Virus record (IMG/VR): IMGVR_UViG_3300045971_000344
Span: 186,001-250,000 of that record
DNA: 64,000 nt
Strand: one strand, 5' to 3'
Shown in pieces: positions 39,409 to 58,590 of this stretch. The position numbers and the translations under genes are program-made. The notes below the pieces were generated by a model that saw nothing but the letters and a program-made list of their open reading frames with translations, did no database searches and was not told where the DNA came from. Within the stretch, counting starts at the first letter, position 1, and the number at the start of each line of letters is the position of its first letter.

Positions 39409-40941
39409 ATGTCACGCAAGGTCGCAGAAAACTTTTTATTTGAGTTCAACGACTCAAGGTCGGTAAAAGAAGGAATTAAGGTATTGAACAATATCCTCAG
39501 TTTTCTTCAAAAAAAGAAACAAACTATAGATGACATCTTAACAGAGATGAGCTCGAACAATGCTTTTATTAGGGTCATAAAGACAAAGCAGGTAGTGATC
39601 TCTGCAGGAGAAAGAGAAATAACCACCCGAGGTACGCCTACTCTTATAGAGGTTCAGGCCAAACCTGCGGATATAAAAGAGGTAATTGCAACTTGGGACA
39701 CTCTAGTGGAACTCAATGAAGTTATTGATCGCTATGAACGTTCTATTGCTCCATCTGCGGAATCTCGCTATAAGAACGTGCCTGAGCTTAAGGCTGTTGA
39801 AGCAAAGGTAGAGTCCTTCATAAAGAAAACAAAGGAAAGCAGGGACAAGCTTTTGAAGAAGTTACAGTCAAAAGTTGATACTTATATGCCACGTTCTTTG
39901 AAGGTCATTGTAGATAAGTTGAAAGAAGAGCTAACTACAAACCTTAAGGGGAGGTTTGAAGAATGCAATGTTCTTTATTATCCATGTGTAATGCCTGTAA
40001 ATAAAGTAAACGTACTCGCATTTTACTGTTACCTCAGTTTTACCCGATTGAAGGACGATGATGACTGGCAACATGAGGTCTTTGACGTGGTCGTGATCTC
40101 CATACCCTTAGCAGATGGGACGACCAAATTTCAGATAAACACTTATGAAGGCCACGCGCTTCCTCTAGAAATTCCTTTGGAGCCTAACAGCTGGGTTGGT
40201 ACTGTTAAGGGCGTTACGGACCGATTGTACTCAACACTAACTGATGTTCACGCCCTTAATTTATTGAAGCCCCAGATGCTTAAAGTTTCAGATAAGGACG
40301 CGAAAAAGACAAAGGACTTTAAATCAAACCAAGAAGTTGCGAAGCTCGAAGTAGTGGATGAAACTTTTAAGATCTATTTAAAGCCTTCTTATGTTAAGTC
40401 AGAGCCTCAGGCGCATAACGTTGGTAAGGCTTTGTGGGCAAAGGTAGTAAAATTCCTCTTAATAGATGCCAAATATAAGTTGAGTTATAAACCAACTCAA
40501 GAAGGAACGAGCTGGATTTTGAATTTTAAAGTGTCTACCCCTACTCAAATAAGTGGTAAGATACAGTCAAATATTCATTTCGATAGTTCTGCGTTTAAAG
40601 ATTTCTGTGTAAGGCAAAACCTGGATGGCCCTCAAATCCGTAAGGTTGAAGAGGCTTTGAAGCACGCAATTTATGAAAAGCATAAGCGGTCAGCGTTTAC
40701 ACAACCCGATATTATTACAGAAAAGGATGATGTTAAGAACCGTCTAAATGATAGCGCAATTATTCCTGCAAAGCGCACAAGTGTAGAAAAACCTGAAACT
40801 GAAAAGACTGCGGTAAGGAAGATACAGCCTAGTATGGCCCCAGAGTCAAAGGAAAAACTTACTAAGGAAATGATTAGACAACAAACTCTGAACAAGCGTA
40901 AGTTCGCACGCCAATTGGAAGATGAGGACGTGGATATATGA
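39409..40941 (+). CDS. Hypothetical protein (510 aa)
   Basis: Long ORF with GAGGAG RBS. Confidence 0.75.
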   Translation: MSRKVAENFLFEFNDSRSVKEGIKVLNNILSFLQKKKQTIDDILTEMSSNNAFIRVIKTKQVVISAGEREITTRGTPTLIEVQAKPADIKEVIATWDTLVELNEVIDRYERSIAPSAESRYKNVPELKAVEAKVESFIKKTKESRDKLLKKLQSKVDTYMPRSLKVIVDKLKEELTTNLKGRFEECNVLYYPCVMPVNKVNVLAFYCYLSFTRLKDDDDWQHEVFDVVVISIPLADGTTKFQINTYEGHALPLEIPLEPNSWVGTVKGVTDRLYSTLTDVHALNLLKPQMLKVSDKDAKKTKDFKSNQEVAKLEVVDETFKIYLKPSYVKSEPQAHNVGKALWAKVVKFLLIDAKYKLSYKPTQEGTSWILNFKVSTPTQISGKIQSNIHFDSSAFKDFCVRQNLDGPQIRKVEEALKHAIYEKHKRSAFTQPDIITEKDDVKNRLNDSAIIPAKRTSVEKPETEKTAVRKIQPSMAPESKEKLTKEMIRQQTLNKRKFARQLEDEDVDI

Positions 40942-41696
40942 GACATATAGAAACTTCGGTACCTATTTCAAAAGGTGATTACGAAGATACGTTTTTTTAT
41001 AGTGAGACAAAAAATATTTATACTGATATTTTTGGTGCAATGATGGATTACGTAACTACATCAGATAGAGACTCCAAGAGTAGATTAGGTAGACTACTAT
41101 TACAGAATTGGAATAAGCTACCTAAGAGAACAGTTCAGTTATCGGGCTCTGCGTTTCGCATTTGGATATTTGGACCCAAGAAAGCAGGAAAAGTTCTTGA
41201 ACGGCTTGAAAATAATGAAGGAATTAAGATTGATTGCTCTGATTTTTTGTCTTTCACGGCCAAACTACCAAGTAGTCCAAGTACATTTAAAAAGTATTGG
41301 TCAGTTCTGAAAACAAATTCAGAATGTGGATCAGTTGTTCTAGTACAGAAGTGTAGATACAAGAAAGGCTTTTCGGTAACAGACTTCCTTGAGTGGTTAA
41401 GAACAGCGGGGTACTTTAAAGATAGCGATGAAACAGACGATTACTCTAGCGGTATAATGATGGACGTAGATGACTCATTAATAACACTGATGAATCAAGA
41501 GCAGGAAGTCTTTGTCTTTGATTCTGTTTTGGACATACATCCAAAGGAAGTAGTAAATATAAAGGTTGCGGTTAAACCAAGTTCACCTTTACCTGGGTTA
41601 CTAATTCCAAGAACAGGAGTAAAGTTTGTAGAAGCACCTGATACAGATCACGCAAAAGAGATGTTGGGCTTAAATAAAAGGAGGACGTCACTGTGA
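40938..41696 (+). CDS. Putative ADP-ribosyltransferase (R-S-E clade)
   Basis: AFR, LSFT and QEQEV motifs occur in the canonical order. Confidence 0.45.
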   Translation: MRHIETSVPISKGDYEDTFFYSETKNIYTDIFGAMMDYVTTSDRDSKSRLGRLLLQNWNKLPKRTVQLSGSAFRIWIFGPKKAGKVLERLENNEGIKIDCSDFLSFTAKLPSSPSTFKKYWSVLKTNSECGSVVLVQKCRYKKGFSVTDFLEWLRTAGYFKDSDETDDYSSGIMMDVDDSLITLMNQEQEVFVFDSVLDIHPKEVVNIKVAVKPSSPLPGLLIPRTGVKFVEAPDTDHAKEMLGLNKRRTSL

Positions 41697-42841
41697 ATTT
41701 TGTCTATAAGTCAACTGATTACCATTTTAGAAACAGAGTAAATCCACGTACTAAGTCATATTTTAATATCATGGTAGGTAGGAATCACAACCACCTTAAA
41801 ACCTATAAGGTTATTGAGCGATTGAAGAAGTATTTGTTTGCACAACAGGCTATATTGGTCAGCCCCAATAACTTCACACTGGTTAATGTAACTTCCTTAT
41901 TGTCCGCAATTTCCTTTGGTTATTCTCAAGAGCCAGTAAACGTACTTCGCTTTGACTCTACTATTGCTTTTACGTTTGCTTTGAGGGCTGACTCCGATCT
42001 TAACTATAGTGCCGCTCCTCCGCATATCAAGAAAATTAGTCATGACATTACGTTCTGGGGTTATAACCACCCGCAGGACTTTGTTACTATTGCCGTGGAT
42101 ATCGCTGACATAGTAGAGGAAGGACTTTCCATAAAGGACTTTGAATACCTTTACTTGGTTACAGGGTCAGTAACTAAGAACTTTGCGCTCTTTAAAGAGG
42201 CGGCACAGCACTCTATGCCTAAGGACAAGCATACTATTGTAAAGAACTATACCAATATCTATAATCTGGATTTGGCTACCCTGATGTACACTGTACCTTA
42301 CGTAGAGTGGGTTTACAATAAACAGATTTGGGAATTTGCACCCGAAGTTATTCCTGCAAACCAAATACACGCCTATAGCGCCCTGTATTATGCTTTGTTT
42401 CTGTCTACCAAATCCTTGACGGTTAAGTACGTTACGAACCTCAAAGGTTGTGGACATTTACTCAATGAGCTGTATCGCTATTATCTAAAATCTCAACAGC
42501 AGTTAATCTCCAATCAGGTTGGTGAGACCGACCACTCCGAAGAGCAAGAGTATCTGATTTCCTTTATTTACCCCGCGTCTGTTTATTGCGTCTTCGCAAT
42601 GATGAACACGCCGGGCTATCGTGACTGGAAGCCCAAAGCTCGTCTGTCTAATATGTACGAATGGTTGTCAAATTTGTCGGTCAAGCTTCAAGAAGATATT
42701 GCTATATTCCAGGATCTCCAATTCTTAGCACAGATTCCTGGACTAGCTAAAGACGCTATTACAAACAAGCTTGCTACATTTAGAAAGGCCGCTGTAATCT
42801 TAGGTGAGCAGTCTAAAATGGCAACCTTCATGCCTAAATAA
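41693..42841 (+). CDS. Hypothetical protein (382 aa)
   Basis: GTG start with AGGAGG RBS. Confidence 0.7.
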   Translation: MNFVYKSTDYHFRNRVNPRTKSYFNIMVGRNHNHLKTYKVIERLKKYLFAQQAILVSPNNFTLVNVTSLLSAISFGYSQEPVNVLRFDSTIAFTFALRADSDLNYSAAPPHIKKISHDITFWGYNHPQDFVTIAVDIADIVEEGLSIKDFEYLYLVTGSVTKNFALFKEAAQHSMPKDKHTIVKNYTNIYNLDLATLMYTVPYVEWVYNKQIWEFAPEVIPANQIHAYSALYYALFLSTKSLTVKYVTNLKGCGHLLNELYRYYLKSQQQLISNQVGETDHSEEQEYLISFIYPASVYCVFAMMNTPGYRDWKPKARLSNMYEWLSNLSVKLQEDIAIFQDLQFLAQIPGLAKDAITNKLATFRKAAVILGEQSKMATFMPK

Positions 42842-42861: not shown

Positions 42862-43107
42862 ATGAGACGTGTAGTTATATCCTCTAGTCCTAGAAAACCT
42901 AATAAGGTAATAACTATTTCTTATGAGGATTGGATAAGGTTCAAACTACATCCATATTTTAGGCGTGCCACCCCTATGGAAACCTCAGGTGAGATTAAAT
43001 GTGAGTTACTCTTTTTACCTGAGAGAAATGAGACTTTTGTTTTTAATAACCATAAGACCAGAGAATATTTTAAATTAAACAAAATAAAAAAGGAGTGTAC
43101 TAAATGA
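42862..43107 (+). CDS. Small leader-bearing hypothetical protein
   Basis: Begins MRRVVISSS; AAGGAG RBS. Confidence 0.65.
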   Translation: MRRVVISSSPRKPNKVITISYEDWIRFKLHPYFRRATPMETSGEIKCELLFLPERNETFVFNNHKTREYFKLNKIKKECTK

Positions 43108-43784
43108 GAAAAGTAATTGTAACGTTGGCAGCGTCAAAAAGGCCCTCAAAAGAACAACTGAAAGCAGAGTTAAAACTGGCGATTGCTGACCATAAGAAAA
43201 TATTGGCAAAGCTCAAAAAGGCTAACGTTAATATAACGCTCGAAAATGAACCTGAAATAGGATGGACTGATTCCGGTTATGATGCAGTTCTGAGTGGAGA
43301 GATAGTTGTAAGAGGTAAGACTGCCTCATACTCTATTAATACCCCTGAAGTAAATTCTGTTGCTAAATTAACAAAAAAGACAAGTTGGGTATTTGATGTA
43401 TTTAAAGGACAGCCTTTGGCTTGTCTAAAGTTTATTATAGAAGCTGTTACTGCAGACGGTGGTGTAACTAAGGTAGACAGTAATCTATTAAGTGCTGAAA
43501 AAGGAATTCTAAAGGCATTGTCAAACGCCGCTGATGCTTATGTAAGAGCTACTAATGTAGCACGCTTAACCTATAGAACTAAAAGTCAGGGTGGCAAAAT
43601 CCTTTGGATTGCAGTACAAGCTCCAAGCGATATGACTGATATGGAAGGTGGGGCAATTCGTGAGGACGATGCTAAAAAGGTTGGGGTGACACTTCAACAG
43701 ATACTGGATTATCTTGTAGCAAAAGATGCGCGTAAGCCCAAGCCTCAGAAACGCTCTCCTTTTAGAGGATGTATGTATGACTAA
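43104..43784 (+). CDS. Leader-bearing hypothetical protein
   Basis: Begins MRKVIVTLAAS; AAGGAG RBS. Confidence 0.7.
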   Translation: MRKVIVTLAASKRPSKEQLKAELKLAIADHKKILAKLKKANVNITLENEPEIGWTDSGYDAVLSGEIVVRGKTASYSINTPEVNSVAKLTKKTSWVFDVFKGQPLACLKFIIEAVTADGGVTKVDSNLLSAEKGILKALSNAADAYVRATNVARLTYRTKSQGGKILWIAVQAPSDMTDMEGGAIREDDAKKVGVTLQQILDYLVAKDARKPKPQKRSPFRGCMYD

Positions 43785-44103
43785 GGTTGGGGTGGTGGGA
43801 TTATTCGGACCAGTTGAGCTAAAAGAAGTGTATCACCCACCTAGTCATAAGAGACGGTATAACGATTATGGTCCTGACTGGGATGAACTGTCTAACACTT
43901 GCTTACTCTTGGCAAATCATATCTGTCAGGACTGTCATAAAAACAAGGCAACTAATGCTCATCACATTACTCCCCTGACCAAAGGTGGGGCAAATGTGCT
44001 GAGTAACCTAAAAGCACTCTGTTTTTATTGCCACGCTAAGTATCATACGCACATGAACAAAGGTCGTAGAAAGGAGGACCATCCTAATGGCGGTGGCAAT
44101 TAA
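43777..44103 (+). CDS. Small HNH endonuclease
   Basis: CQDC...AHHI.PL..GG.N...NL.ALC..CH...H; start reassigned to ATG 43777. Confidence 0.85.
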   Translation: MTKVGVVGLFGPVELKEVYHPPSHKRRYNDYGPDWDELSNTCLLLANHICQDCHKNKATNAHHITPLTKGGANVLSNLKALCFYCHAKYHTHMNKGRRKEDHPNGGGN

Positions 44104-45418: not shown

Positions 45419-46441
45419 ATGAGATATGTAGCCATTTCAAGCGGACTAACGGATGAGATCAGAGGTTTGTTCTCAATAGCCGTTAAGGACGATAAACAAC
45501 CGGGTGATATAAGGGAATGGGAAGATAGCCTAAAAGCACTTAAGCCTAAGCTATATGAAGCATATAGATCAGCTATTACTAATAAGCTCATAGAGTGGCG
45601 TGTAGAGCTCGTACCTTACCATGGATTAGGTAGTCGTAGCTGGAGCGTTAATTCCTACAGAGCTGGTCTTAAAGGTGATGACGCGGCGATCAAGCACCCC
45701 GCCCACGTTTTAAGAGAGACGAATTCTAAGACACAGGCCCAGAAGGCAAAAGAAAAAATTGATGAATATAAATACACTAAGGTTTTATCAAGAGAACAGG
45801 GCTTCTATAAGCGCCTACGGTATCTGTATAAATTCAATTCCACTAAATTGTCTGATTGGGACCGACAGTTTATTACCTCTTTGGGTAACCAATTGACCGA
45901 AGGTAGACCTAGTACATTGAAGCAAAAGCAAATAGCGAGTAAATTATTTGAAAAATATAAAGTACCAGAAGGAGCAGAGGCAACTACTATGAGAAAGACT
46001 ACTATAAGGCATACCAAATCTAATAAGTCCAAGACTACTGCTGTGGACATGGATACAGAGTACAAAATGCTTAAGGCTCTTAATAAGTTTGCTGGTAAAG
46101 ACATTAGATTCAAGGACATGATTAAGCTCGAATTTAGGGGTGAAACCGACCACATTGAGATTTTTAGTCACCCTTTGAATTTCAATGTCAGTATAAACAC
46201 AAGCGAATTACTACATAAGTTTAAGGTTCACCCTGGTGCATTCTTGACCTTTTTGTACTATAACGGGGCTCAAAATAACGATCCTCAGAATTTAAAAGCT
46301 TATGTACCATATTCCTTTAGAAGGAAAGGCGTAAAAGCATTCAAAGGCCCTTCAAAATGGGTACATGATAGCGCTGGTTTTTGGAAGCAGATTCCTCTTA
46401 ATCCAGAAGATGAGGATTTTGAAAGCATAGAAGTTGAATAA
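45419..46441 (+). CDS. Leader-bearing two-part hypothetical protein
   Basis: Begins MRYVAISSG; internal in-frame RBS plus ATG at 45989. Confidence 0.7.
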   Translation: MRYVAISSGLTDEIRGLFSIAVKDDKQPGDIREWEDSLKALKPKLYEAYRSAITNKLIEWRVELVPYHGLGSRSWSVNSYRAGLKGDDAAIKHPAHVLRETNSKTQAQKAKEKIDEYKYTKVLSREQGFYKRLRYLYKFNSTKLSDWDRQFITSLGNQLTEGRPSTLKQKQIASKLFEKYKVPEGAEATTMRKTTIRHTKSNKSKTTAVDMDTEYKMLKALNKFAGKDIRFKDMIKLEFRGETDHIEIFSHPLNFNVSINTSELLHKFKVHPGAFLTFLYYNGAQNNDPQNLKAYVPYSFRRKGVKAFKGPSKWVHDSAGFWKQIPLNPEDEDFESIEVE

Positions 46442-46779: not shown

Positions 46780-47238
46780 ATGCGAAAGATAAGGGTTGCT
46801 ATTGCATCCGTAAAGAACGAATTATCTTATCAGTGGTACAAAATAAAGAGTCGGGTACAGCCCATGGAACTCCGAGGTAAAGAAGTACGACTCAATCAGG
46901 GTGATGTTATCGGTTTCCGTCCAGGTTCCAATGGAAAGACCACTCGCATGGTCCTCAAGGATAGCATCGGGTACGTTATGAGTCCTACCAAAGAACAGGT
47001 TGAGTATTTATTGAAGAAATGCGAGCCCTTAATTGGTGGCGCAATAGACACAGCCAAGATAGGCTTAGTAACTGAACCTAAGGTTAGCGTTAAAGACAGG
47101 CGCATACTTGAAGAACTAAAGGACATGTCTAATATCTTGAAAAGGTATAAAGACATAACTGACATAAAGATCGAAAATAAACGTTTGCTATTTAGGTACG
47201 ATAATCGTCCTTACAGTATTATTAGCGACCCTTCTTAA
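46780..47238 (+). CDS. Leader-bearing hypothetical protein
   Basis: Begins MRKIRVAIAS; GAGGAGG RBS. Confidence 0.7.
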   Translation: MRKIRVAIASVKNELSYQWYKIKSRVQPMELRGKEVRLNQGDVIGFRPGSNGKTTRMVLKDSIGYVMSPTKEQVEYLLKKCEPLIGGAIDTAKIGLVTEPKVSVKDRRILEELKDMSNILKRYKDITDIKIENKRLLFRYDNRPYSIISDPS

Positions 47239-47249: not shown

Positions 47250-47801
47250 ATGAAGACCATTAGTGTAGAAATAAGTAGCGGAGATAACCAGTTAGTGTCC
47301 CAAGCAATACGGATCCTAACTAAGGTTGTTGACGCGGGTTTTAAGAAGAAAAAGGGTAAGGGCGCTACGGGGAAAAATACTGTACAAAAGGCCATAGAGA
47401 AATTCGTTAGAAGTCTTCCTGAAAAGGATCTTCAGGAATTGATAGAAAGTAAGTACGAAAATACGGAGACCTCTGAAGATAGATTACTCGCTTTGGCTTA
47501 CAATATGAAGCAGCAGTCTACTAGGATGCCAAAAGAAAAGATAGCGGAACGGTCGGAACGCCATAAGGCAATGATAACAAAGCGTAAGAACAGAATAAAA
47601 GAACTTGAAATGAAGAAAAAGAACAGTACAAACCCAGATACTGTAAAGCGTATCTCACAGATTGTTACCAAGCATAAAGATCGTATTGACCGCCATAATG
47701 AAGCTCTTAAGTATTACAAAATGCTTGGGTCGTTAAAGCCCAAGACGCATAAAGACATAGTTAAAAAGAAGACCAATCCAATGGGCCAGTCTACTAAATA
47801 A
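47250..47801 (+). CDS. Leader-bearing basic helical protein
   Basis: Begins MKTISVEISSG. Confidence 0.7.
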   Translation: MKTISVEISSGDNQLVSQAIRILTKVVDAGFKKKKGKGATGKNTVQKAIEKFVRSLPEKDLQELIESKYENTETSEDRLLALAYNMKQQSTRMPKEKIAERSERHKAMITKRKNRIKELEMKKKNSTNPDTVKRISQIVTKHKDRIDRHNEALKYYKMLGSLKPKTHKDIVKKKTNPMGQSTK

Positions 47802-47813: not shown

Positions 47814-48206
47814 ATGAGAAAAATCAGTGTCCGTATTGTCACAACCGCGGCTGGCGCAGGAGAAGCATGGTGGAACAATCAGAGCAAAGAGCAGAAGGCG
47901 GCGTACATCAAAGCTCATCCAAATAGTAAGTATGCTAAACAAGCGGGAGCAGAAAAAGAGACTGTGGTAAACCAACATCCAAAGAAACTTATAACTGATT
48001 CTAAACTTAATAAGAAACAAGAAAAAATAAAGGAGCTTAACGTCCAGTTAAAAAATGAAAAGGAGACGTTAAAAAAGCTTACGAAACAACTACCAAAGTA
48101 TAGATGGGGCTCATCCGCTAGTTTATGTAGATCAGAAATAGCCGATATTAAAGAAAAGATACAAAAGATTGAAAAGCAACTACAAAAATATGAAGATAAA
48201 ATCTAA
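47814..48206 (+). CDS. Leader plus WW-HPxSKY module protein
   Basis: MRKISVRIVTTAAG..EAWWNNQSKEQKAAYIKAHPNSKYAK. Confidence 0.75.
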   Translation: MRKISVRIVTTAAGAGEAWWNNQSKEQKAAYIKAHPNSKYAKQAGAEKETVVNQHPKKLITDSKLNKKQEKIKELNVQLKNEKETLKKLTKQLPKYRWGSSASLCRSEIADIKEKIQKIEKQLQKYEDKI

Positions 48207-50155: not shown

Positions 50156-51355
50156 ATGGCTATCAGAATATGGGAATATGGGTCATCCCCAGAAGCAGTA
50201 AATCAGAGTACGACTAATGTCCAGATTGTGGTTGGAAACCCTATTTCCTGTTCTGAGCAATTTTTGTCTACCGAGACGGGGGTTCCTTTGGAGCCCCTTT
50301 CTGGGTATCCTATTGTCCAAGTATTAGAGGGAGTTGACCTCATTACATCCACAATAGGTTATAGAAACAATAACGCTCTGCCCGGGGAGTGGACCGCGGA
50401 TCTAACAATCCCGCCCACAATAGAATTCAATTCTGGTAAAGAGAAGATACTTACCTTATCTTGGATATTTAAGTCCCTTGAAGGAACGGAAAAGTCCAAT
50501 CAGTATATAACCGTTGTACCCAAAGACGATGTCTACTCTGAGGACTACAAAGAGATTGTTTTACTTGGACCAGTACAGGACTTGAAGGTTACTGTCCCTT
50601 ACATAATAAACGTTCTGGCAGGTGACATTGCAGAATATACGTTATACGATGAAAACTCCCCTATCTCTTCAGGGAAAGCCGCAGACTCGGCTATAAATGG
50701 TCCTCACAGCGTTCTGTCTTTTACTGTAATCAGCCCCTTGTTTGTTCCACGACTTCGTCCATATAATCTTGTTATTACCTTGCGCTTTAACACCGCTGTC
50801 CGTCAGTTGTTTTCCAACGTATATCAGATTAATCCTACCATACTTAGTGCGATGCAGGCTCTAGAACTATCCATAAATAAGGCAAATCAAATTGAGACAA
50901 TTAGAGGACTCCAGTTCCGTGAGGTAGACCTTTTACAAGGATTAACCCGGGGACTCGACTACTTCAATAACGTACCGCCTACCCTAACGAGTTTCACCGG
51001 CGTCTGCATGACAGGCGGTATAAGAGAGGGCTGGCTCGTCTGCGCGTCAATCCGGTCCCTTAGAGCACAGCTACAGTCGGAGGGGATGTTCCAATTTGAT
51101 TTTTCTGGACAAAATATTAGTCTTAATGTTGACCGTCAGCAGGCAATAGAGAGTGCTTGTGGTCATTATGAATCATTAGTCGATACTATGGTCAGGCCCT
51201 TGAAGATCATACTGGGTAAAAAGGGCGTAGTAAACGGTGATGGCTCATTAGGTGATAAATTGGCATTGATGTCTTCAATGGGTCTGACCAGACTGAGTAA
51301 TAATGCTATAACTCGTTCTAAGTTAGGCAATCCATTATACCCTAGGACATGGTGA
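50156..51355 (+). CDS. Putative neck/head-tail adaptor structural protein
   Basis: Beta-rich N-terminus and a helical C-terminus with LDYFN..PP.LT and FDFSGQNISLNVDR. Function inferred. Confidence 0.45.
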   Translation: MAIRIWEYGSSPEAVNQSTTNVQIVVGNPISCSEQFLSTETGVPLEPLSGYPIVQVLEGVDLITSTIGYRNNNALPGEWTADLTIPPTIEFNSGKEKILTLSWIFKSLEGTEKSNQYITVVPKDDVYSEDYKEIVLLGPVQDLKVTVPYIINVLAGDIAEYTLYDENSPISSGKAADSAINGPHSVLSFTVISPLFVPRLRPYNLVITLRFNTAVRQLFSNVYQINPTILSAMQALELSINKANQIETIRGLQFREVDLLQGLTRGLDYFNNVPPTLTSFTGVCMTGGIREGWLVCASIRSLRAQLQSEGMFQFDFSGQNISLNVDRQQAIESACGHYESLVDTMVRPLKIILGKKGVVNGDGSLGDKLALMSSMGLTRLSNNAITRSKLGNPLYPRTW

Positions 51356-51359: not shown

Positions 51360-51596
51360 ATTAGATACACAACTATTGCTAAAACAACTAAGCGTGGTAA
51401 TTTAGATTACGACCCTGAAGATATCCCTGAGTATAAGAAGGGTGCGGTCAAAGCAAAGGCCGATGGTATGTTTGTTATGTTTTATGATAAAAAGGGAAAT
51501 GAACTGGGTAGAAAGAAAATAGGAAACGCTAATCAAGCACAAGAATGCGCGGAATCAAATAATGTATTCTATAAGAAATATGGAGTTATGCTATGA
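51360..51596 (+). CDS. Unannotated 78-aa ORF with probable ATT start (or start-mutated pseudogene)
   Basis: ATT AGA TAC ACA ACT ATT GCT reads (M)RYTTIA, which is leader-like. GGTGA lies upstream, the frame fills the gap, and its stop forms an ATGA overlap with the next gene. Confidence 0.55.
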   Translation: MRYTTIAKTTKRGNLDYDPEDIPEYKKGAVKAKADGMFVMFYDKKGNELGRKKIGNANQAQECAESNNVFYKKYGVML

Positions 51597-52027
51597 GGTA
51601 CGTTACCCTATCTGTATCTACTAATCCAAATAGACCTAAATTTGGGACCTGTATTACTAAAGGTAAATTATGTCTATGCTTTGAAAATGCTCGTTTAGAG
51701 TATTGGGCCCAAAAGGCTAAGGGTAATGATTGCAAGTACATAGTTGGACTTGTTTATGGTGTTCCAAAAGAATTTGAGAAGGAAAAACAAGATAGTAAAC
51801 CCAGTGGTCTTTCTCACGCATGGGTAGAACTTGAAGATAATACAATAGTGGACCCCACACCCTATGCAATAGGTAAGTGGGTTCAAAGTAGAGAAATAGA
51901 AAATAATACTGCTCCAAAAGAGTATGCACTTAAGTATTGGAGTAAAAAGCATCCTTTAGAATACAAGATAAATAAGGAAATAAAAGAATCAAAATTAAGG
52001 GCGGTACTAAAATACTTTCCTCTATAG
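51593..52027 (+). CDS. Transglutaminase/papain-like Cys-His-Asp protein with leader
   Basis: CFENA...HAWVE...VDPT; begins MRYVTLSVST. Confidence 0.6.
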   Translation: MRYVTLSVSTNPNRPKFGTCITKGKLCLCFENARLEYWAQKAKGNDCKYIVGLVYGVPKEFEKEKQDSKPSGLSHAWVELEDNTIVDPTPYAIGKWVQSREIENNTAPKEYALKYWSKKHPLEYKINKEIKESKLRAVLKYFPL

Positions 52028-52040: not shown

Positions 52041-52313
52041 ATGCAAGTAGATACTGAGAAAATGGTTCCCACCCAAATGAAGTCCAAGCTTAAGAAGAAG
52101 GGCTATTGGATCGTATCTTGTGAGTCCGCGGGTGGTGGTAACCGTGCCCACAGCTATTGGTTCGTCTATTGGAATGACCTAGACGACTCGGTCCACGTAC
52201 AGACCGATGGTACCTTAGGTGGGGCGAGTAAGTCCTATAATAAGCAAAAGGCAATGGAAATCGCCATAACAAAAAGATATAAAGAACTTTATACGAAAGG
52301 ACAATTGCTATGA
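52041..52313 (+). CDS. Hypothetical protein
   Basis: 90 aa; ATGA overlap with the next gene. Confidence 0.6.
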   Translation: MQVDTEKMVPTQMKSKLKKKGYWIVSCESAGGGNRAHSYWFVYWNDLDDSVHVQTDGTLGGASKSYNKQKAMEIAITKRYKELYTKGQLL

Positions 52314-52798
52314 AAAAGATAACGGTTAGAATCACCACCGCAAAGACCGATGAGCCTGTAGTAGAAAATCAATTTGCAGAGATCGTAAAAGAGATGCGGC
52401 AAATGCCTGCAGTTAAGAACAAAGAAGCCGTGTTGAAGAAGCGTAAAAACTGTATTCACCTGGAATATAAGGGCGCTAATTACTATATCGTACGCCATAT
52501 CCATGAATTGAAGAAACTTAGAGAAGAGTCTTCTGAAACTCCAGGGGACTTAGACTTTATGGATTCTTATGGCTTTAAATACTATGGGTTAACTGAAGGT
52601 AACCACGTATTTTCTTATTCTAAATTCGTGCCATCTAAAGGTATAACTTTTAGTTGTTCCGTTCGAGTAGCTAAAGATGGAACTTGGAGTGGTGGTGGGT
52701 CTGATGCTAAATTTCCTAAAAACAGAGGGTCTAACCTTTCTCAGTTAAAGACTTACGCTAATTCAGTTAAAAAGAAAATGAATTCCTTAGGTTCTTAA
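52310..52798 (+). CDS. Leader-bearing hypothetical protein
   Basis: Begins MKKITVRITTA. Confidence 0.7.
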   Translation: MKKITVRITTAKTDEPVVENQFAEIVKEMRQMPAVKNKEAVLKKRKNCIHLEYKGANYYIVRHIHELKKLREESSETPGDLDFMDSYGFKYYGLTEGNHVFSYSKFVPSKGITFSCSVRVAKDGTWSGGGSDAKFPKNRGSNLSQLKTYANSVKKKMNSLGS

Positions 52799-52825: not shown

Positions 52826-53197
52826 ATGGCAACAATTTGTGTTGACTTTGATGGAACTGTAGTTACCCATGACTACCCAAGAGTAGGTAAAGATATAGGA
52901 GCGGTTCCTGTACTAAAAAGATTAGTCGAAGACGGGCATAGACTAATCTTATGGACAATGAGAGACAAAGCTGAGTTACAAGATGCAGTCAATTGGTTTT
53001 TTCAGAATAATATACCTCTTTGGGGTGTGAATGAGAACCCAGAACAACATACTTGGACGGACAGTCCAAAGGCTTATGGCCAACATTATATAGACGATTG
53101 TGCGGTTGGCACTCCCTTAATTCATGGTGTACACAGTAGACCTTATATTGATTGGGCACGTATGGAGCAATTATTGTTGGAGATGGGGGTACTATGA
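52826..53197 (+). CDS. HAD-superfamily hydrolase (small capless type)
   Basis: VDFDGT (motif I), LWTMR (motif II) and K..YIDD (motifs III/IV). Confidence 0.85.
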   Translation: MATICVDFDGTVVTHDYPRVGKDIGAVPVLKRLVEDGHRLILWTMRDKAELQDAVNWFFQNNIPLWGVNENPEQHTWTDSPKAYGQHYIDDCAVGTPLIHGVHSRPYIDWARMEQLLLEMGVL

Positions 53198-53397
53198 AGA
53201 TCAAACGACTAAAAATAACAACTGCGGCTGATACAGATAAGCATGACTACATAATTGCCGTAAAAGAGATGCTAGATAGCCATGATGAAAATGACCACAA
53301 TAAGACACAGTTCGATAACTACTCTGATAAAGCGCGCCAATTATTGGACAACAATAAAGATCGTGATAGAATGACAGTACTACTTTTATCTACCTGA
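53194..53397 (+). CDS. Small leader-bearing hypothetical protein
   Basis: Start reassigned to ATG 53194; begins MKIKRLKITTAA. Confidence 0.6.
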   Translation: MKIKRLKITTAADTDKHDYIIAVKEMLDSHDENDHNKTQFDNYSDKARQLLDNNKDRDRMTVLLLST

Positions 53398-53410: not shown

Positions 53411-54727
53411 ATGATATGTATTAAGCGATATAGGGTCCATATAAGAACCACAGCTAAAGAAGTATTGGCTAAAAACGATGACGAATGGTTTAAGGGCCTA
53501 ACTAAAGAACAGCAAAAGCAGTACTTGGAAGAACACCCAAATAGTAAATTTGCTAAAACCTTTAAGGCTAAAGAAGATGAGAATGGCCAATCAGGATCTA
53601 AAAAGACTGGCCCAGCCAAAGTAAAAAAAGAAAAGACTGACCCTTATAAAGATGTACCCGAAGAAGATAAAAAGGTCATGCTGGCGGCAAAGACTCGCGG
53701 ATATAGAGTGCCTCCTGCGTGGAGAAATGTGTGGCTCAATCCTAACCCAAAGGCTGATCTTCAGGTTAAAGGTAAGGATGCAAAGGGCCGTACTCAAAGT
53801 GTATATACTGCGTCTTTTAGAGCCGCTCAGGATATAAAGAAGTTTAACCGCCTAAGAGATTTCACTAAGGCCTATAAAGGTATGCGGACCCAGATAGACA
53901 AGGACTTTGATGAATCTCCTGAGGCACAGTGTTTATATTTGATAGCCAAGACAGGATTCAGGATTGGCAGCTCCAAAGAGACTGGCGCGAAGGTTAAAGC
54001 GTACGGAGCATCTACTCTTACTGTTGACCATATCTCAATAGATGGGGACATTATTAACTTTGATTTTACTGGTAAAAAGGGCGTACACCAGAAACATGAG
54101 ATTGTAGATGCAAAGCTCGCTAAAATGCTGAGTACTAAGAAAGAGGGCTTATTATTTGAGACGAATGGAGCAAAGATACATAAGTATTTAGAATCCTTAA
54201 ATCCAGAACAAAAATTTGAGGTCAAAGATTTTAGAACATACGTTGCTACCTCCACAGCTCTATCTTCGGTATCCTCTATGGAAGCCCCTAGGACTAAAGC
54301 AGAATATATAAAATCCGTAAATAAGGTCTGTAAGACTGTTTCAGAAAAATTAGGTAACTCCCCAGACATGGCTAAAAAGTCTTATATAGATCCTACCGTC
54401 TTCAAGGAATGGCAATCGAATATAACTGACCCGGATGTAGAGACCTCGAGTGATTCTATTGGGCCTTATTTCTGTCTAGCTATGGACAAAGAACAGCAAC
54501 TTATGCAGGACTTTATAGAGTGCAATCACTATAGGATTCCAGATAAGGTAGTTATAGCCCTTAAGAGAGTTATTAAACTTCCTCGTGGAAAAGATAGAGA
54601 GATCGCCTATTCTGCCTTCCAAAAGCTCGCAAAGGTTTTCAACTTAGTAGATACTTCAAGTAAAAAGGTCTACATAGACTCTCTCCGTGAGATCGAAAAG
54701 ATTGCACGTTCACAGGGTGATTTATGA
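53411..54727 (+). CDS. DNA topoisomerase IB (poxvirus/bacterial type) with N-terminal leader and WF-HPNSKF module
   Basis: Motifs PPAW..V, G.D.KGR.Q..Y, GFRIG, F.GKKG, KDFRT and LGN.P..AKKSYI (catalytic Tyr). Confidence 0.9.
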   Translation: MICIKRYRVHIRTTAKEVLAKNDDEWFKGLTKEQQKQYLEEHPNSKFAKTFKAKEDENGQSGSKKTGPAKVKKEKTDPYKDVPEEDKKVMLAAKTRGYRVPPAWRNVWLNPNPKADLQVKGKDAKGRTQSVYTASFRAAQDIKKFNRLRDFTKAYKGMRTQIDKDFDESPEAQCLYLIAKTGFRIGSSKETGAKVKAYGASTLTVDHISIDGDIINFDFTGKKGVHQKHEIVDAKLAKMLSTKKEGLLFETNGAKIHKYLESLNPEQKFEVKDFRTYVATSTALSSVSSMEAPRTKAEYIKSVNKVCKTVSEKLGNSPDMAKKSYIDPTVFKEWQSNITDPDVETSSDSIGPYFCLAMDKEQQLMQDFIECNHYRIPDKVVIALKRVIKLPRGKDREIAYSAFQKLAKVFNLVDTSSKKVYIDSLREIEKIARSQGDL

Positions 54728-54972
54728 GTCGTCTCGTAGTTATCGCCGGCTCGGCCTGTAAAGGCTGTGGGGAGTCGAATACTATAAAAGACAAGCGTAG
54801 GGACTACGTAGATGTAGATAACAGCGATGAAATGCAGACTTTTAGGGTCTGTCGTCTTTGTGGACACAGGGAAATTATAAAGACACGAATGACGGTCCGT
54901 AAACGCGCAAGGCAGGATAAGCTGGCTGGTCTAGCTGACCTAATAAACGAATTGACCAATAGAGGGCAATAG
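54724..54972 (+). CDS. Zinc-ribbon protein
   Basis: CKGC...CRLC. Confidence 0.65.
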   Translation: MSRLVVIAGSACKGCGESNTIKDKRRDYVDVDNSDEMQTFRVCRLCGHREIIKTRMTVRKRARQDKLAGLADLINELTNRGQ

Positions 54973-54974: not shown

Positions 54975-55292
54975 ATGAAGATCAAAGGAATTACTATAGC
55001 TTCTTCTATAGATGACCGGCTGGAGACCATATTCAAGCAATTAGGTGCAAAGTACATGAACCATAACGGACAGTCAGTATTGGTCTTGAATACTACTCCA
55101 GACGTAATGGCACAAAAGGTTGAGATAGCGTATGAACAGTTGAGGAAACTGGGATATGATAATAAAAGCCAGTCCCAAAAGCATTTCTGGTATATAGTAG
55201 ATGCTCAAAATGAATTACCTGAGGTTCAGATTGAGTCACAAGGTTCTGAGGGTTTTATCAAAGAAAAGCACAATTATACTATAACTTGGTAA
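54975..55292 (+). CDS. Leader-bearing hypothetical protein
   Basis: Begins MKIKGITIASS. Confidence 0.65.
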   Translation: MKIKGITIASSIDDRLETIFKQLGAKYMNHNGQSVLVLNTTPDVMAQKVEIAYEQLRKLGYDNKSQSQKHFWYIVDAQNELPEVQIESQGSEGFIKEKHNYTITW

Positions 55293-55333: not shown

Positions 55334-55633
55334 ATGAGAACGATAAGGGTAAGTATTGAGACCACCAAGACTACTGCGGCATCTCCGAAGGGAATTATCC
55401 AAGTATTCTTCTGTAATGGCTTGAATACTGCAATGGGTAAAGGCGTTATCTTTCCTACTAAGGCTGAGGCAGTTGAGTATGCTATTAGCAAGTTAAGAAC
55501 AAGCAGTAATTTATTTAGTTCAAAAGTATGTTTAGATACAGTTGACTCTAAAGGATGGACTTCACAAGAAACTCTCGCTGAGTTTGTAAAAAACAGCTCG
55601 GGTAAGGTTTGCAAATTAGTTCCAGTAAAATAA
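55334..55633 (+). CDS. Leader-bearing hypothetical protein
   Basis: Begins MRTIRVSIETT; preceded by GTAATTTA (55301) and GAGGAG. Confidence 0.65.
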   Translation: MRTIRVSIETTKTTAASPKGIIQVFFCNGLNTAMGKGVIFPTKAEAVEYAISKLRTSSNLFSSKVCLDTVDSKGWTSQETLAEFVKNSSGKVCKLVPVK

Positions 55634-55697
55634 TAAATATCAGGAGCACTTGTCCATGACAAGACAAATACAAACAGCAGGACAAAGGAGAAGGGTC

Positions 55698-56522
55698 ATG
55701 AAAGAAATCGGGAAATCAATTATTCAGGAATTAGCGGCAAACATGGATCGTCTCACTGTTGGCATCGAGAGCTTCAAGACACACGGAGACAAGAGCAAGG
55801 TTCGTGTATCAGTAATTGCAACTTCGGACTCAAACAAATCTGATATCTTGAAGTCAATTAACTCACAGTTCGGTGGTCGTCTTAGGGCAGTTGCTCGCTC
55901 ATTCCGTATCGTAGAATCGTCTAATGCGGACCGTAATAACGTAACTTTTAAGCTCCAGGGATACGTTGTACCAAATGTAGAAATAGTGGCCGCATCTTCT
56001 GAGCAGGGAAAGAAAATGAAGTGTGTTGCGTCCAATATGTTTATGGACCAGTCTGATTGCATTTGGAGCAAAACTGGAGATTTCTTATATAAGAAATCAG
56101 ATGTTGAGACCGCAGAAGAACTTAATCAGTTTCTTACTGAGTGTAGCTCAACCACAACCCGGGTCAGAAAGGGCCTTGATTTTGAGACCGTAGTGGCCTC
56201 CGCAGGAGATTTCGTCCGTTACTTGAGTAAAGGTGAAATGTGCTGTGGTATTGTAGTAGCGGCCGATGAAACAAATCATAAGCTCATGGTACTGGCCGAA
56301 GGTGAAGAAGACCCAGAAGTTATTGATACTTTTGACGTCCAGGATAGTCTGCCCGTAGATGATGAGAAAGTACGCTTTCCTGAAGAGACGGACATGGTTG
56401 AGACCTCGGCGTCAGCCGTAGATATTAACGCCATCGTTTCTTACTACAAGCGTTGGTTTACCTACAATCCCAACTACGCCCAGATGCTGATTGACCGATT
56501 GAATCAGCATGCCTTTTGCTAA
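55698..56522 (+). CDS. Putative head/virion structural protein
   Basis: Start at ATG 55698 (AAGGAG RBS). Several internal [VI]x[AT][SA] sites (IVAAS, CVAS, VVAS, VETSAS). Confidence 0.6.
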   Translation: MKEIGKSIIQELAANMDRLTVGIESFKTHGDKSKVRVSVIATSDSNKSDILKSINSQFGGRLRAVARSFRIVESSNADRNNVTFKLQGYVVPNVEIVAASSEQGKKMKCVASNMFMDQSDCIWSKTGDFLYKKSDVETAEELNQFLTECSSTTTRVRKGLDFETVVASAGDFVRYLSKGEMCCGIVVAADETNHKLMVLAEGEEDPEVIDTFDVQDSLPVDDEKVRFPEETDMVETSASAVDINAIVSYYKRWFTYNPNYAQMLIDRLNQHAFC

Positions 56523-56650: not shown

Positions 56651-56683
56651 ACAATATTATTATTATATACTGTAGGAGAGTTT

Positions 56684-57013: not shown

Positions 57014-57031
57014 ACCATATAGGTGTGAACT

Positions 57032-57691: not shown

Positions 57692-57720
57692 TCATTAATA
57701 AAGATTTGAGGTAAACCTTT

Positions 57721-58590
57721 ATGGCATATCATAAGTTACAAGTAACTATTTCAGCGGCAGGTGGTGGAAAGTCCACGCATGACCATCCTAAGGGACTTTC
57801 TAAGCCAGCTAGCTCTGGTGATAACTGGTTTGACCGTTTAAGTGAGGACGAGCAGACGGAATATATAGAGTCGCATCCTAATTCAAAGTATGCTAAAAAT
57901 ATTCACCGTGTTGACCACGAAGACCAATCGGATAAGAGTAAGAAGAAATCCGGATCTGATACTAAAAATCCAAAAGCAATGCGCCATGTATTGGCTGATA
58001 AAATAAAGGTCCTACCTAAGAAACACAAAGAATTTTTTGAGACCGAGCAGGACCAACCCAATTCAGAACAACGTTCAGGTATTGCAAAGCACATACGATT
58101 GAACCATAAAGAAATAGTTAAGCACATGAAAGGTCAGATTGTAGAGTGGAAAGATGGATGCGGGGCTATTGCAAAGCTCGCTACTGGTAAGTCCATTTCG
58201 GCACATGAAAAGAAAGCATTGAAGGCCCTAGTTATAGATGCATCCGTTATAGCTGCTTCTGTTGCTGTAACAGGTGGGTTTGCTCACGGAGCAGCGCTGG
58301 CATTGAAGCACGTTGGATTCGATGTCTTAAAAGATGTTGTACTCAAAACGGTTATAAGAGGAACTACAAGAGCAATGGGCGCATCTACAGGAGTAACTGG
58401 ACTGGTAGGCTTAGAAGCCTTGGCTACTACAGCTGCCTCTAAGAAAGTAAACCCAGATAGAATAAACGATAAGATAATGAGCATGCTGGTTAAACAGCTT
58501 GCGGCCTATATTGAAAAGGGTGATATCCCTAAAGAGGCTTGGGATAAGGCTATTGATGAATTGGCTGCAACTAATAGGAAGCGTAAATGA
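57721..58590 (+). CDS. Leader plus WF-HPNSKY module protein with hydrophobic Gly/Ala-rich segments
   Basis: DNWFDRLSEDEQTEYIESHPNSKYAK; hydrophobic stretch ALVIDASVIAASVAVTGGFAHGAALAL. Confidence 0.7.
   Translation: MAYHKLQVTISAAGGGKSTHDHPKGLSKPASSGDNWFDRLSEDEQTEYIESHPNSKYAKNIHRVDHEDQSDKSKKKSGSDTKNPKAMRHVLADKIKVLPKKHKEFFETEQDQPNSEQRSGIAKHIRLNHKEIVKHMKGQIVEWKDGCGAIAKLATGKSISAHEKKALKALVIDASVIAASVAVTGGFAHGAALALKHVGFDVLKDVVLKTVIRGTTRAMGASTGVTGLVGLEALATTAASKKVNPDRINDKIMSMLVKQLAAYIEKGDIPKEAWDKAIDELAATNRKRK

What the first reader, a model, noticed from the sequence alone, without database searches (positions are those of the whole stretch)
40938..58590. Shared N-terminal leader on about 20-25 unrelated proteins: candidate capsid-targeting and protease-cleavage address
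Seen in sequence: otherwise unrelated ORFs begin with a basic, alternating beta-strand that ends in a small-residue site. The instances are MRRVVISSS (42862), MRKVIVTLAAS (43104), MRYVAISSG (45419), MRKIRVAIAS (46780), MKTISVEISSG (47250), MRKISVRIVTTAAG (47814), MRRIIVKIVTTASG (48411), MKKISVRISS (48951), MRYVTLSVST (51593), MKKITVRITTA (52310), MKIKRLKITTAA (53194), MICIKRYRVHIRTTA (53411, topoisomerase IB), MSRLVVIAGS (54724), MKIKGITIASS (54975), MRTIRVSIETT (55334), MAYHKLQVTISAA (57721) and MRHIETS (40938). On the left arm they are MKIIKFVIVAD, MKIKAVTIAN, ferritin FKLNVLTASG, capsid VKFTLASG and scaffold VVTVAGS. The same [VILE]-x-[TSA]-[SA] site recurs internally in head proteins (VETSS, TEISS, VETSAS, VEASS, EIASA). 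Established knowledge: T4 internal proteins carry a ~10-aa capsid targeting sequence removed by the prohead protease, and phiKZ head proteins are cleaved at a short shared motif; both cut after Glu. Inference: this is a different, small-residue-specific address that loads a large cargo set into the head.
Basis: partly seen in the sequence, partly recalled or inferred. Interest (0 to 1): 0.82.

Follow-up and report, generated by a model that had tools for sequence, protein, structure and literature searches.

The report
Shared N-terminal leader on phage proteins
Some 16-18 otherwise unrelated proteins of a 295-kb pond jumbo phage begin with the same short basic beta-strand ending in small residues; relatives carry their own versions, and it is most likely an address that loads cargo proteins into the phage head, though packaging and cleavage are untested.

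Summary
A strict pattern (M, R/K, x, I/V/L, x, I/V/L, then two small residues) hits 11 of 67 window genes against 0.19 expected. A looser core hits 18 against about 2. All strong cases lie at 42.8-58.6 kb. Codons differ between copies, so selection acts on the peptide. Position matrices trained on the window recover 18 of 88 genes in three syntenic relatives (0.09 expected), and the reverse also works.

Cultured relatives (Erwinia phage Y3, Pseudomonas phage PaBG, Burkholderia phage BcepSauron) carry their own versions of the leader.

Five window proteins follow the leader with a second shared module, WW...KEQQ..YI..HPNSKYAK. This module occurs in 864 protein clusters, including polyvalent proteins and type IB topoisomerases, and has no Pfam or PHROG hit.

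A head-targeting leader or propeptide, like the T4 capsid targeting sequence, is the best reading. It is not shown. No protease was found in the window, and no virion proteomics exists for this phage.

Only the Glu-containing internal sites (VETSS type) are enriched, and one such site is conserved across the clade. That fits the usual cut after Glu.

Verdict: new variant of a known kind, interest 0.66.

The parts
42862..42888 (+). leader MRRVVISSS of an 81-aa ORF
   Evidence: strict pattern hit; matrix hit
43104..43136 (+). leader MRKVIVTLAAS of a 226-aa ORF
   Evidence: strict hit; ortholog L014_2277 starts MRKIVIAATN
45419..45445 (+). leader MRYVAISSG of a 340-aa ORF
   Evidence: its domains are shuffled relative to L012_6209
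46780..46809 (+). leader MRKIRVAIAS of a 152-aa ORF
   Evidence: in the AlphaFold2 model residues 1-14 are disordered and the fold starts near residue 17; the ortholog L011_5976 carries the same element internally at residue 66
47250..47282 (+). leader MKTISVEISSG of a 183-aa ORF
   Evidence: contains the Glu form VEISS
47814..47855 (+). leader MRKISVRIVTTAAG of a 130-aa ORF, followed by the WW module at 47868-47939
48411..48452 (+). leader MRRIIVKIVTTASG of a 161-aa ORF, followed by the WW module at 48459-48530
48951..48980 (+). leader MKKISVRISS of a 396-aa ORF; internal site TEISS at 49410-49424 just before an internal WW module at 49440-49511
51593..51622 (+). leader MRYVTLSVST of a 144-aa ORF
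52310..52342 (+). leader MKKITVRITTA of a 162-aa ORF
53194..53229 (+). leader MKIKRLKITTAA of a 67-aa ORF
   Evidence: ortholog L011_13172 starts MKIKRVRISTIAAD
53411..53455 (+). leader MICIKRYRVHIRTTA of topoisomerase IB (438 aa); WW module at 53486-53557; internal VETSS at 54437-54451
   Evidence: Pfam Topoisom_I E 8.6e-27; orthologs in L011, L012 and L014 all carry leader plus WW module
54724..54753 (+). leader MSRLVVIAGS of an 82-aa ORF with CxxC pairs (possible zinc ribbon)
   Evidence: only a sub-threshold Pfam zinc-ribbon hit
54975..55007 (+). leader-like MKIKGITIASS of a 105-aa ORF; may be the first strand of the fold
   Evidence: the AlphaFold2 model (pLDDT 56) places residues 2-9 as a paired strand
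55334..55366 (+). leader MRTIRVSIETT of a 99-aa ORF
57721..57759 (+). leader MAYHKLQVTISAA of a 289-aa ORF; WW module at 57826-57897; its C-terminal end resembles that of BcepSauron gp075
55650..56522 (+). conserved 290-aa virion-module protein (equivalent to Y3_181 and PaBG gp197) with three internal sites: VRVSVIATS 55800-55826, VEIVAASS 55977-56000, VETSAS 56397-56414
   Evidence: the last site is conserved across the clade
4877..4900 (-). VKFTLASG, residues 11-18 of the major capsid protein (3836-4930)
   Evidence: PHROG major head protein E 4.8e-85; conserved in close relatives; reads TLRNG in Alexandra
7565..7585 (-). VVTVAGS, residues 12-18 of the 613-aa, largely disordered scaffold-like protein (5777-7618); further internal sites TEIASA 6281-6298 and VEASS 5882-5896
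8252..8281 (-). FKLNVLTASG, residues 9-18 of a ferritin-like protein (7757-8305), followed by a Gly/Ser linker
   Evidence: Pfam Ferritin E 2.2e-16
9624..9656 (-). weak leader MKIIKFVIVAD (132-aa ORF); neighbouring weak leader MKIKAVTIAN at 9935-9964 (68-aa ORF)
   Evidence: L007 has MKIKKVTLSDS at the equivalent gene
50156..51355 (+). head-tail connector gene without a leader, in the middle of the leader cluster
   Evidence: PHROG 17327 E 1.7e-61; used to fetch the relatives

Best explanation
The shared N-terminus is a lineage-specific leader of about 8-15 residues: Met, one or two basic residues, an alternating aliphatic beta-strand, then a run of Ser/Thr/Ala/Gly. It marks a set of proteins for incorporation into the assembling head, in the manner of the T4 capsid targeting sequence. 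These would be internal or ejected cargo. The leader would be recognised by one common partner, such as the scaffold core, the capsid interior or the maturation protease. Each phage lineage therefore has its own version, shared by all of its carriers. Some carriers are probably trimmed by the prohead protease. The best candidate scissile sites are the Glu-containing ones (VE/TSS type). For the many leaders without Glu, removal is uncertain. Shown: the motif, its statistics, its peptide-level conservation, its spread among relatives, its genomic setting and its independence from the fold in one protein. Inferred: packaging, the binding partner, cleavage and ejection.
For: 1) Enrichment and cross-validation, with conservation at the peptide level and not the DNA level. 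2) The carriers are otherwise unrelated, yet their orthologs in L011, L012 and L014 keep a leader whose sequence drifts. 3) More distant cultured relatives have their own shared versions. Y3 has MKIFVSLS on five or more genes and a long form ending in SES-A. PaBG has ..INL.EAVAA and related forms. BcepSauron has ..A..RLL.T. The ART-PolyVal protein keeps a leader in both Y3 (Y3_193) and L014 although the leaders differ. This is what co-evolution with one receptor would produce. 4) Setting: the carriers fill the gaps between conserved virion-module genes (41693, connector 50156, 55650, 57032), which are contiguous in Y3. They lie on one strand, tightly packed, upstream of tail-fibre genes. 5) Cargo types match known injected proteins: ART-PolyVal and GNAT, topoisomerase IB, and WW-module homologs within polyvalent proteins carrying LPD1, RelA_SpoT and HNH domains. 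Such proteins are predicted to be packaged (PMC5512222). 6) Leader-like segments occur near the N-termini of the capsid protein, the disordered 613-aa scaffold-like protein and a ferritin-like protein. 7) Leader-like elements also occur internally at domain junctions (48951 residue 154; L011_5976 residue 66; many multi-module homologs). 8) In the AlphaFold2 model of 46780, residues 1-14 are disordered and lie outside the fold. 9) In PaBG, virion proteins are proteolytically processed, and gp83 and gp202, which have leader-like N-termini, are in the virion (PMC7412058). EAVAA occurs three times in PaBG against 0.19 expected.
Against: There are no virion proteomics or N-terminal data for this phage or for any close relative. 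No maturation protease was found in the window, in the relatives' loci, or among the best 120 of 168 database hits. A ferritin-like gene sits where Alexandra and BcepSauron have the protease. In PaBG the protease lies just downstream of the same glycosyltransferase. Iyer et al. 2021 (PMC7824862) assign a T4 gp21-type peptidase to jumbo-phage groups 1 and 2, and that type cuts after Glu, but most leaders here lack Glu. For 54975 a low-confidence model makes the N-terminal strand part of a sheet, so the class may be mixed. Other PaBG virion proteins (gp191, gp261, gp263) show no leader. BcepSauron's WW protein gp075 lies next to the tail-tube gene, not among head genes. The capsid-plus-leader complex prediction gave no answer.
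Confidence: 0.5

Rival explanations
1. The leader is an uncleaved docking peptide. It binds the capsid interior or the scaffold by strand addition, as encapsulin cargo-loading peptides bind their HK97-fold shell, and it stays on the mature cargo. Proteolysis happens only at the separate Glu-containing sites.
For: Most leaders lack Glu. The alternating hydrophobic-plus-small pattern, followed in the ferritin-like protein by a Gly/Ser linker, resembles encapsulin targeting peptides, and ferritin-like proteins are classic encapsulin cargo (both from my own knowledge). Only the Glu-containing sites are enriched internally. No protease was found.
Against: The capsid and scaffold-like proteins carry the same segment, which is odd for a cargo tag. 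The complex prediction gave no answer either way. Internal copies at domain junctions look more like processing sites.
Confidence: 0.2
2. One reading: the leader is both address and substrate of a protease that cuts at the small-residue run (for example after the last aliphatic residue), a specificity unlike T4 and phiKZ. The enzyme could be a replacement for the lost clade-type protease.
For: N-terminal leaders and internal sites fit one loose consensus, aliphatic-x-[ITVL]-[STA]-[STA]. The clade-type protease is missing from its syntenic place. Herpesvirus assemblin, which shares its fold with phage prohead proteases, cuts at V/L/I-x-A / S, and the staphylococcal Prp protease cuts similar strand-plus-small leaders on phage 80alpha head proteins (both from my own knowledge).
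Against: The loose consensus is not enriched internally (17 observed against 23.6 expected); only the Glu form is. The conserved site in 55650 keeps Glu in this lineage (window, L012, L014) and in PaBG, while Y3 has Asp there. No candidate enzyme was identified.
Confidence: 0.12
3. The feature is not a head address. It could be a tag for another shared process (a chaperone, an unfoldase or degron, or co-translational control). It could also be a by-product of A-rich second and third codons favoured for translation, combined with the common habit of alpha/beta domains of starting with a hydrophobic first strand.
For: Lys/Arg codons right after ATG are common in AT-rich phages (my own knowledge). 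54975 may use the strand in its fold. HAD-like 52826 starts with a similar first strand, MATICVDFDGT.
Against: The pattern is absent from about 30 left-arm genes of the same composition. It precedes all-helical or disordered regions (47814, 48411). It is disordered in the 46780 model. It changes together across all carriers from one lineage to the next. It also recurs internally before WW modules.
Confidence: 0.12

Closest known systems
T4 capsid targeting sequence of the internal proteins IPI-III (Mullaney and Black 1996, as cited in PMC10052503)
   Same: A short N-terminal sequence of about 10 residues, shared by several otherwise different proteins, that directs them into the prohead core. 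It sits at the extreme N-terminus. The cargo includes host-modifying enzymes; T4 Alt is an ADP-ribosyltransferase, and here an ART-PolyVal protein carries the leader in relatives.
   Different: The sequences are unrelated. The T4 sequence ends in the protease site (cut after Glu), whereas most leaders here have no Glu. The set here is larger (16-20 or more genes in 16 kb) and each lineage has its own version. Packaging is not demonstrated here.
Propeptides of phiKZ and SPN3US head and ejection proteins, cut at (S/A/G)-x-E (PMC10052503; PMC5694885)
   Same: Jumbo phages in which many head proteins share a short protease motif. SPN3US prefers Val at P4 and Ser at P1'. That resembles VE/TSS here, SE/SA in Y3 and E/AVAA in PaBG.
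   Different: Those propeptides are mostly 111-254 residues long and are not a shared N-terminal strand. Those phages belong to another jumbo-phage group. Here the strand-plus-small leader is the conserved element and Glu is optional.
Encapsulin cargo-loading peptides
   Same: Short peptides of alternating hydrophobic and small residues, joined by a flexible linker, that load cargo into an HK97-fold shell. Ferritin-like proteins are typical cargo (my own knowledge).
   Different: They are usually C-terminal and uncleaved, and they occur in cellular nanocompartments rather than tailed phages. No binding could be predicted here.
L27-like leaders of staphylococcal phage 80alpha capsid and scaffold proteins, removed by the host Prp protease
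   Same: An N-terminal strand of alternating hydrophobic residues ending at a small residue, shared by capsid and scaffold. The ferritin-like protein's KLNVLTAS resembles KLNLQFFAS (my own knowledge).
   Different: There is no Phe-Phe-Ala core. The cultured relatives infect Proteobacteria, and by my own knowledge, not tested here, Proteobacteria have no Prp. The set here extends to about 20 non-structural proteins.
Polyvalent proteins of phages and conjugative elements (Iyer et al. 2017, PMC5512222)
   Same: Homologs of the WW module sit inside multi-domain proteins carrying LPD1, RelA_SpoT, HNH and RNA-ligase domains. The domain types ART-PolyVal and GNAT are shared. Both are predicted to travel with the DNA.
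   Different: Here the effector domains are mostly split into many small genes, each with its own leader, instead of being fused in one giant polypeptide.

Membership tests
T4-type capsid targeting sequence / prohead-protease propeptide | A short N-terminal sequence shared by several otherwise unrelated phage proteins | tested here: met
   11 strict and 18 loose hits against 0.19 and about 2 expected; the carriers are unrelated beyond residue 16
T4-type capsid targeting sequence / prohead-protease propeptide | The leader ends at the prohead protease consensus (cut after Glu) | tested here: not met
   Only about 4 of 17 leaders have Glu at the junction (47250, 55334, 40938, 57032). The rest read Ile, Val or Leu followed by Ser, Thr or Ala
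T4-type capsid targeting sequence / prohead-protease propeptide | The phage encodes a gp21-type prohead protease | tested here: inconclusive
   A profile of 13 clade proteases finds nothing in the window or in about 110 kb of the relatives' loci. No hit from the 294,944-bp contig appears among the best 120 of 168. About 215 kb of the genome was not available
T4-type capsid targeting sequence / prohead-protease propeptide | The carriers are present in virions and the leader is removed | not testable with these tools
   Only DNA runs from pond metagenomes hold the sequence. There is indirect support from PaBG gp83 and gp202
phiKZ/SPN3US-type (S/A/G)-x-E cleavage motif | A recurrent small-x-Glu motif at processing sites of head proteins | tested here: inconclusive
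   [VTI]E[TI][ST][STA] gives 5 hits against 0.72 expected, and the site in 55650 is conserved across the clade. However, P3 is Asp, Tyr, Met or Lys rather than Ser, Ala or Gly, and the pattern was chosen after seeing the data
Encapsulin cargo-loading peptide | The peptide binds the interior of the HK97-fold shell protein | tested here: inconclusive
   Complex prediction of capsid residues 19-364 with residues 1-30 of 47814 scored 0.00; the tool's verdict was 'no answer'
Encapsulin cargo-loading peptide | A terminal peptide joined to the cargo by a flexible linker and not part of its fold | tested here: met
   In 46780, residues 1-14 are disordered in the AlphaFold2 model. The ferritin-like protein has a Gly/Ser linker after the motif. 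54975 may be an exception
Prp / L27-type leader | A leader with the Phe-Phe-Ala/Ser type core, and a host (Firmicutes and allies) that encodes Prp | tested here: not met
   No leader has the aromatic pair. The cultured relatives infect Erwinia, Pseudomonas, Dickeya and Burkholderia. The host of this phage is unknown
Sec, Tat or lipoprotein signal peptide | A hydrophobic core of about 7-15 residues, a twin-Arg motif or a lipobox Cys | tested here: not met
   The leaders are 8-15 residues long with charged residues alternating inside the strand and have no lipobox. This was judged by inspection only; no predictor was run

The most novel reading that the evidence does not exclude
This lineage lost the clade's Glu-specific prohead protease, and a ferritin-like gene now occupies its place. 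It now loads 20 or more cargo proteins, including that ferritin-like protein, a type IB topoisomerase and host-modifying enzymes. Loading would use a protease-independent, encapsulin-like strand peptide that docks on the capsid or scaffold, or a new small-residue-specific enzyme. The leader plus WW module would then be a general, still undescribed packaging cassette used by hundreds of phage lineages and by polyvalent proteins.
Probability: 0.15. Interest if true: 0.88.

Novelty: new variant of a known kind. Interest (0 to 1): 0.66.

Why it matters
If the leader is a packaging address, it gives a sequence-only way to list the injected cargo of a whole clade of jumbo phages (the Lu11/PaBG/Y3/Alexandra/BcepSauron group and their many uncultured relatives). 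Most of those proteins are currently orphans of unknown function. It would show that the address co-evolves lineage by lineage with its receptor. It would also supply a short tag for loading foreign proteins into large capsids. The accompanying WW...HPNSKYAK module (864 clusters, no hit in the Pfam or PHROG searches run here) also links the many small cargo genes of these phages to the giant polyvalent proteins of other elements. That link suggests a common logic of delivery. The question is directly testable in cultured relatives.

Tried and rejected
- **DNA-level repeat or recombination cassette:** rejected, because codons differ between copies.
- **Paralogous gene family:** rejected. Apart from the WW module, only one short 32-residue match (42862 with 48951) remains after the first 16 residues are removed.
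- **Near-identical phage in GenBank:** none found.
- **Pfam and PHROG searches of about 60 proteins:** these gave function only for topoisomerase IB, HNH, ferritin, glycosyl/methyl-transferase, connector, capsid, sheath and resolvase.
- **Search for the maturation protease:**
  - BLASTP of Alexandra gp145 against 55650 found nothing.
  - A clade HMM run against all ORFs found only a meaningless E 0.08 hit.
  - A scan of viral contigs did not return this contig.
  - A profile search of 5.8 billion proteins had no row from the 294,944-bp contig among the best 120.
- **Complex prediction, capsid with leader:** no answer.
- **Shared promoter word upstream of leader genes:** none found.
- **tRNA and Rfam scans:** empty.
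- **RNA evidence:** only DNA runs from pond metagenomes hold the sequence.
- **Reading the genome further right:** one look-up returned no DNA, and a second route gave 10 kb.
- **Context of two WW-module homologs:** the contigs were too short to be useful.
- **PaBG virion proteins gp191, gp261 and gp263:** no leader found.

Full report
**Source and setting**

The window is part of IMGVR_UViG_3300045971_000344, a 294,944-bp contig. Window position equals contig position minus 186,000. Near-identical sequence occurs only in DNA runs from pond metagenomes.

The left arm (minus strand) encodes:
- tail sheath, major capsid protein (3836-4930) and a 246-aa virion protein;
- a 613-aa protein that the ESM Atlas models as largely disordered and that I treat as scaffold-like;
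- a ferritin-like protein, a glycosyl/methyl-transferase, and large tail-fibre genes.

The capsid protein is 47% identical to those of the Erwinia, Pseudomonas, Dickeya and Burkholderia jumbo phages around Lu11, PaBG, Y3, Alexandra and BcepSauron (group described in PMC7412058).

The right arm (plus strand, from 37.7 kb) holds conserved virion-module genes (41693-42841; connector 50156-51355; 55650-56522; 57032-57691) and then tail-fibre genes. In Erwinia phage Y3 the equivalents of these conserved genes are contiguous (Y3_183 to Y3_179). Here the gaps between them are filled with about 25 small genes.

- The strict pattern hits 11 of 67 genes against 0.19 expected. A looser core hits 18 against about 2.
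- A position matrix trained on the window finds 18 of 88 genes in three syntenic relatives (L011, L012, L014), against 0.09 expected. The reverse finds 9 of 67 against 0.07.
- Codons differ freely between copies, so the peptide is what is conserved.
- Without their first 16 residues the carriers are unrelated, apart from one further shared module (below) and a single short match between 42862 and 48951.
- I count 16 good cases at 42.8-58.6 kb and several weak ones (40938, 57032, 9258-9656, 9758-9964).
- At least three more lie just beyond the right end of the window (MKITKVTIAS, MKIVKVEIS, MKIVRIALNTAAS).
- None of about 30 left-arm tail, fibre or enzyme genes has an N-terminal leader.

**Spread among relatives**

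The connector's homologs led to three relatives at 55-63% connector identity. About half of the genes around the connector in each relative start in the same way (MRKIVIAATN, MRKTIISSSN, MRYTVLASVD and so on).

Orthologs keep a leader while its sequence drifts. This holds for 43104, 46780, 53194, 54724, 54975, topoisomerase IB and 57721.

Leader-bearing proteins in the relatives include an ART-PolyVal ADP-ribosyltransferase and a GNAT acetyltransferase.

More distant cultured phages have their own versions:
- Y3 has MKIFVSLS on at least five genes, plus a longer form ending in ..SES-A.
- PaBG has forms such as ..INLLEAVAA.
- BcepSauron has ..A..RLL.T.

The Y3 ortholog of the ART-PolyVal protein carries the Y3 version. 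A signal that changes together in all carriers of a genome is what co-evolution with one shared receptor would produce.

**A second module**

In 47814, 48411, topoisomerase IB (53411) and 57721 the leader is followed by a 24-residue module: W-W/F, x3, S/T-K-E-Q-Q, x2, Y-I, x2, H-P-x-S-K-Y-A-K. In 48951 the same module sits internally, just after a TEISS site.

A profile of leader plus module finds 864 clusters at E of 0.001 or better among 1.84 billion representatives. In 107 of the listed hits the module starts within the first 45 residues. It is preceded by a leader with a median length of 18 residues, which ends in small residues and a nearly fixed Asp two positions before the Trp.

The leaders again fall into lineage-specific versions. 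Internal copies in multi-module proteins are also preceded by a strand-plus-small segment.

The hits include BcepSaruman/BcepSauron gp075, topoisomerase IB fusions, and polyvalent proteins with LPD1, RelA_SpoT, HNH and RNA-ligase domains. None of the module carriers I scanned gave a Pfam or PHROG hit over the module.

**What it most likely does**

The best-supported reading is a head-targeting leader in the manner of the T4 capsid targeting sequence (cited in PMC10052503). The arguments are:
- the genomic setting among virion genes;
- the cargo types, which match proteins known or predicted to be injected (PMC5512222);
- leader-like segments near the N-termini of the capsid, scaffold-like and ferritin-like proteins;
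- leader-like elements at domain junctions (48951; L011_5976 residue 66);
- an AlphaFold2 model of 46780 in which residues 1-14 are disordered and the fold starts at about residue 17;
- data from PaBG, where virion proteins are proteolytically processed and the virion proteins gp83 and gp202 have leader-like N-termini.

The claim of a small-residue-specific cut is not supported.
- The loose consensus is not enriched internally (17 observed against 23.6 expected). Only the Glu-containing form [VTI]E[TI][ST][STA] is enriched: 5 against 0.72, with 0 of 1000 shuffles reaching 5. That pattern was chosen after seeing the data.
- The C-terminal site of the conserved 290-aa protein aligns across the clade as MVE/TSAS (window), MVE/TSSS, MVE/VSSA, EME/AVAAG (PaBG) and AVDSVSAAAG (Y3).
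- EAVAA also occurs in PaBG gp83 and gp220, giving three copies against 0.19 expected.
- This pattern of Glu followed by lineage-specific small residues fits a cut after Glu. SPN3US shows the same kind of rule: A-x-E, with Val at P4 and Ser at P1'. Iyer et al. 2021 (PMC7824862) assign a T4 gp21-type peptidase to jumbo-phage groups 1 and 2, and they place Lu11 and PaBG in subgroup 2.2.

Most leaders in the window lack Glu. They may therefore be targeting-only, cut at a later acidic residue, or cut by an unknown enzyme.

**Open problems**

- I could not find a protease. The clade-type enzyme sits between the glycosyltransferase and the scaffold-like gene in Alexandra and directly upstream of the scaffold-like gene in BcepSauron. 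In PaBG it lies just downstream of the glycosyltransferase but away from the capsid module. Here that place holds small ORFs and the ferritin-like gene.
- A clade profile finds nothing in the window or the relatives' loci. A database-wide profile search shows no row from this contig among the best 120 of 168. About 215 kb of the genome was not available to me.
- One low-confidence model (54975, pLDDT 56) puts the N-terminal strand into a sheet, so a few members may simply start with a first strand of their fold.
- The capsid-leader complex prediction gave no answer.

**Comparison and verdict**

The feature works like the T4 targeting sequence and the propeptides of phiKZ-like phages. It fails the membership feature of ending at a Glu site in most copies. 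It resembles encapsulin loading peptides and Prp-cleaved L27-type leaders in form only.

I rate it a new variant of a known kind. It is real, clade-wide and, as far as my literature searches went, not described. Its mechanism is still inferred.

Noticed in passing
window 47868-47939, 48459-48530, 49440-49511, 53486-53557, 57826-57897: A 24-residue module (WW/WF...KEQQ..YI..HPNSKYAK) follows the leader in five proteins. It occurs in 864 clusters database-wide, mostly at N-termini after lineage-specific leaders, and also inside polyvalent proteins and topoisomerase IB fusions. None of the carriers scanned gave a Pfam or PHROG hit over it.
   Followed up: partly
window 7757-8305 (-): A ferritin-like protein with a leader-like N-terminus and a Gly/Ser linker sits in the head module where Alexandra and BcepSauron encode the head maturation protease. 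No protease homolog was found in the window or in close relatives' loci.
   Followed up: partly
window 34750-37000: A 2.3-kb ORF-poor stretch separates the divergent left and right arms. It has no tRNA, no Rfam family and no match in the phage collection, only short repeats and one perfect 16-nt hairpin at 36952-36994.
   Followed up: partly
window 24436-28092 and 29758-30702 (-): Tail-fibre proteins are built from dozens of 18-residue repeats (..L.TE[IV]TAR....D.TL..). These repeats swamp any loose search for 'E-small' motifs.
   Followed up: no
window 40938-41696 and 45419-46441; L012 6209-7504: Domain shuffling: the relative's 431-aa leader protein equals the N-terminal part of 45419 plus the whole of 40938. 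The C-terminal part of 45419 is a separate small leader gene in L012 and L014.
   Followed up: partly
window 47250-47801 and 48228-48398: The 56-aa ORF at 48228 nearly repeats the C-terminal end of 47250, and 47814 and 48411 are paralogs. This points to a local tandem duplication of a leader-gene pair.
   Followed up: no
window 43726-44103 and 58587-58868: Two paralogous HNH endonuclease genes without leaders bracket the leader-gene cluster. Relatives keep both.
   Followed up: no
window 53411-54727: Topoisomerase IB has an internal VETSS site (residue 343) after the catalytic core. If that site is cut, a C-terminal piece of about 95 residues would be released.
   Followed up: no
L015 (Erwinia phage Y3, KY984068 135617-176723) and L018 (PaBG 148541-154450): The giant helicase-like proteins of about 1950 aa (Y3_176, starting MINISTSATA; PaBG gp202, starting MGSLFTLNSLSAA) carry leader-like N-termini. 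PaBG gp202 was detected in virions.
   Followed up: partly
window 1374-1754 (-): A small 126-aa protein next to the sheath gene contains VETSAP followed by an Ala/Ser/Pro-rich tail. It is one of the five Glu-type sites and the only one that falls outside the head proteins and the leader-gene cluster.
   Followed up: no
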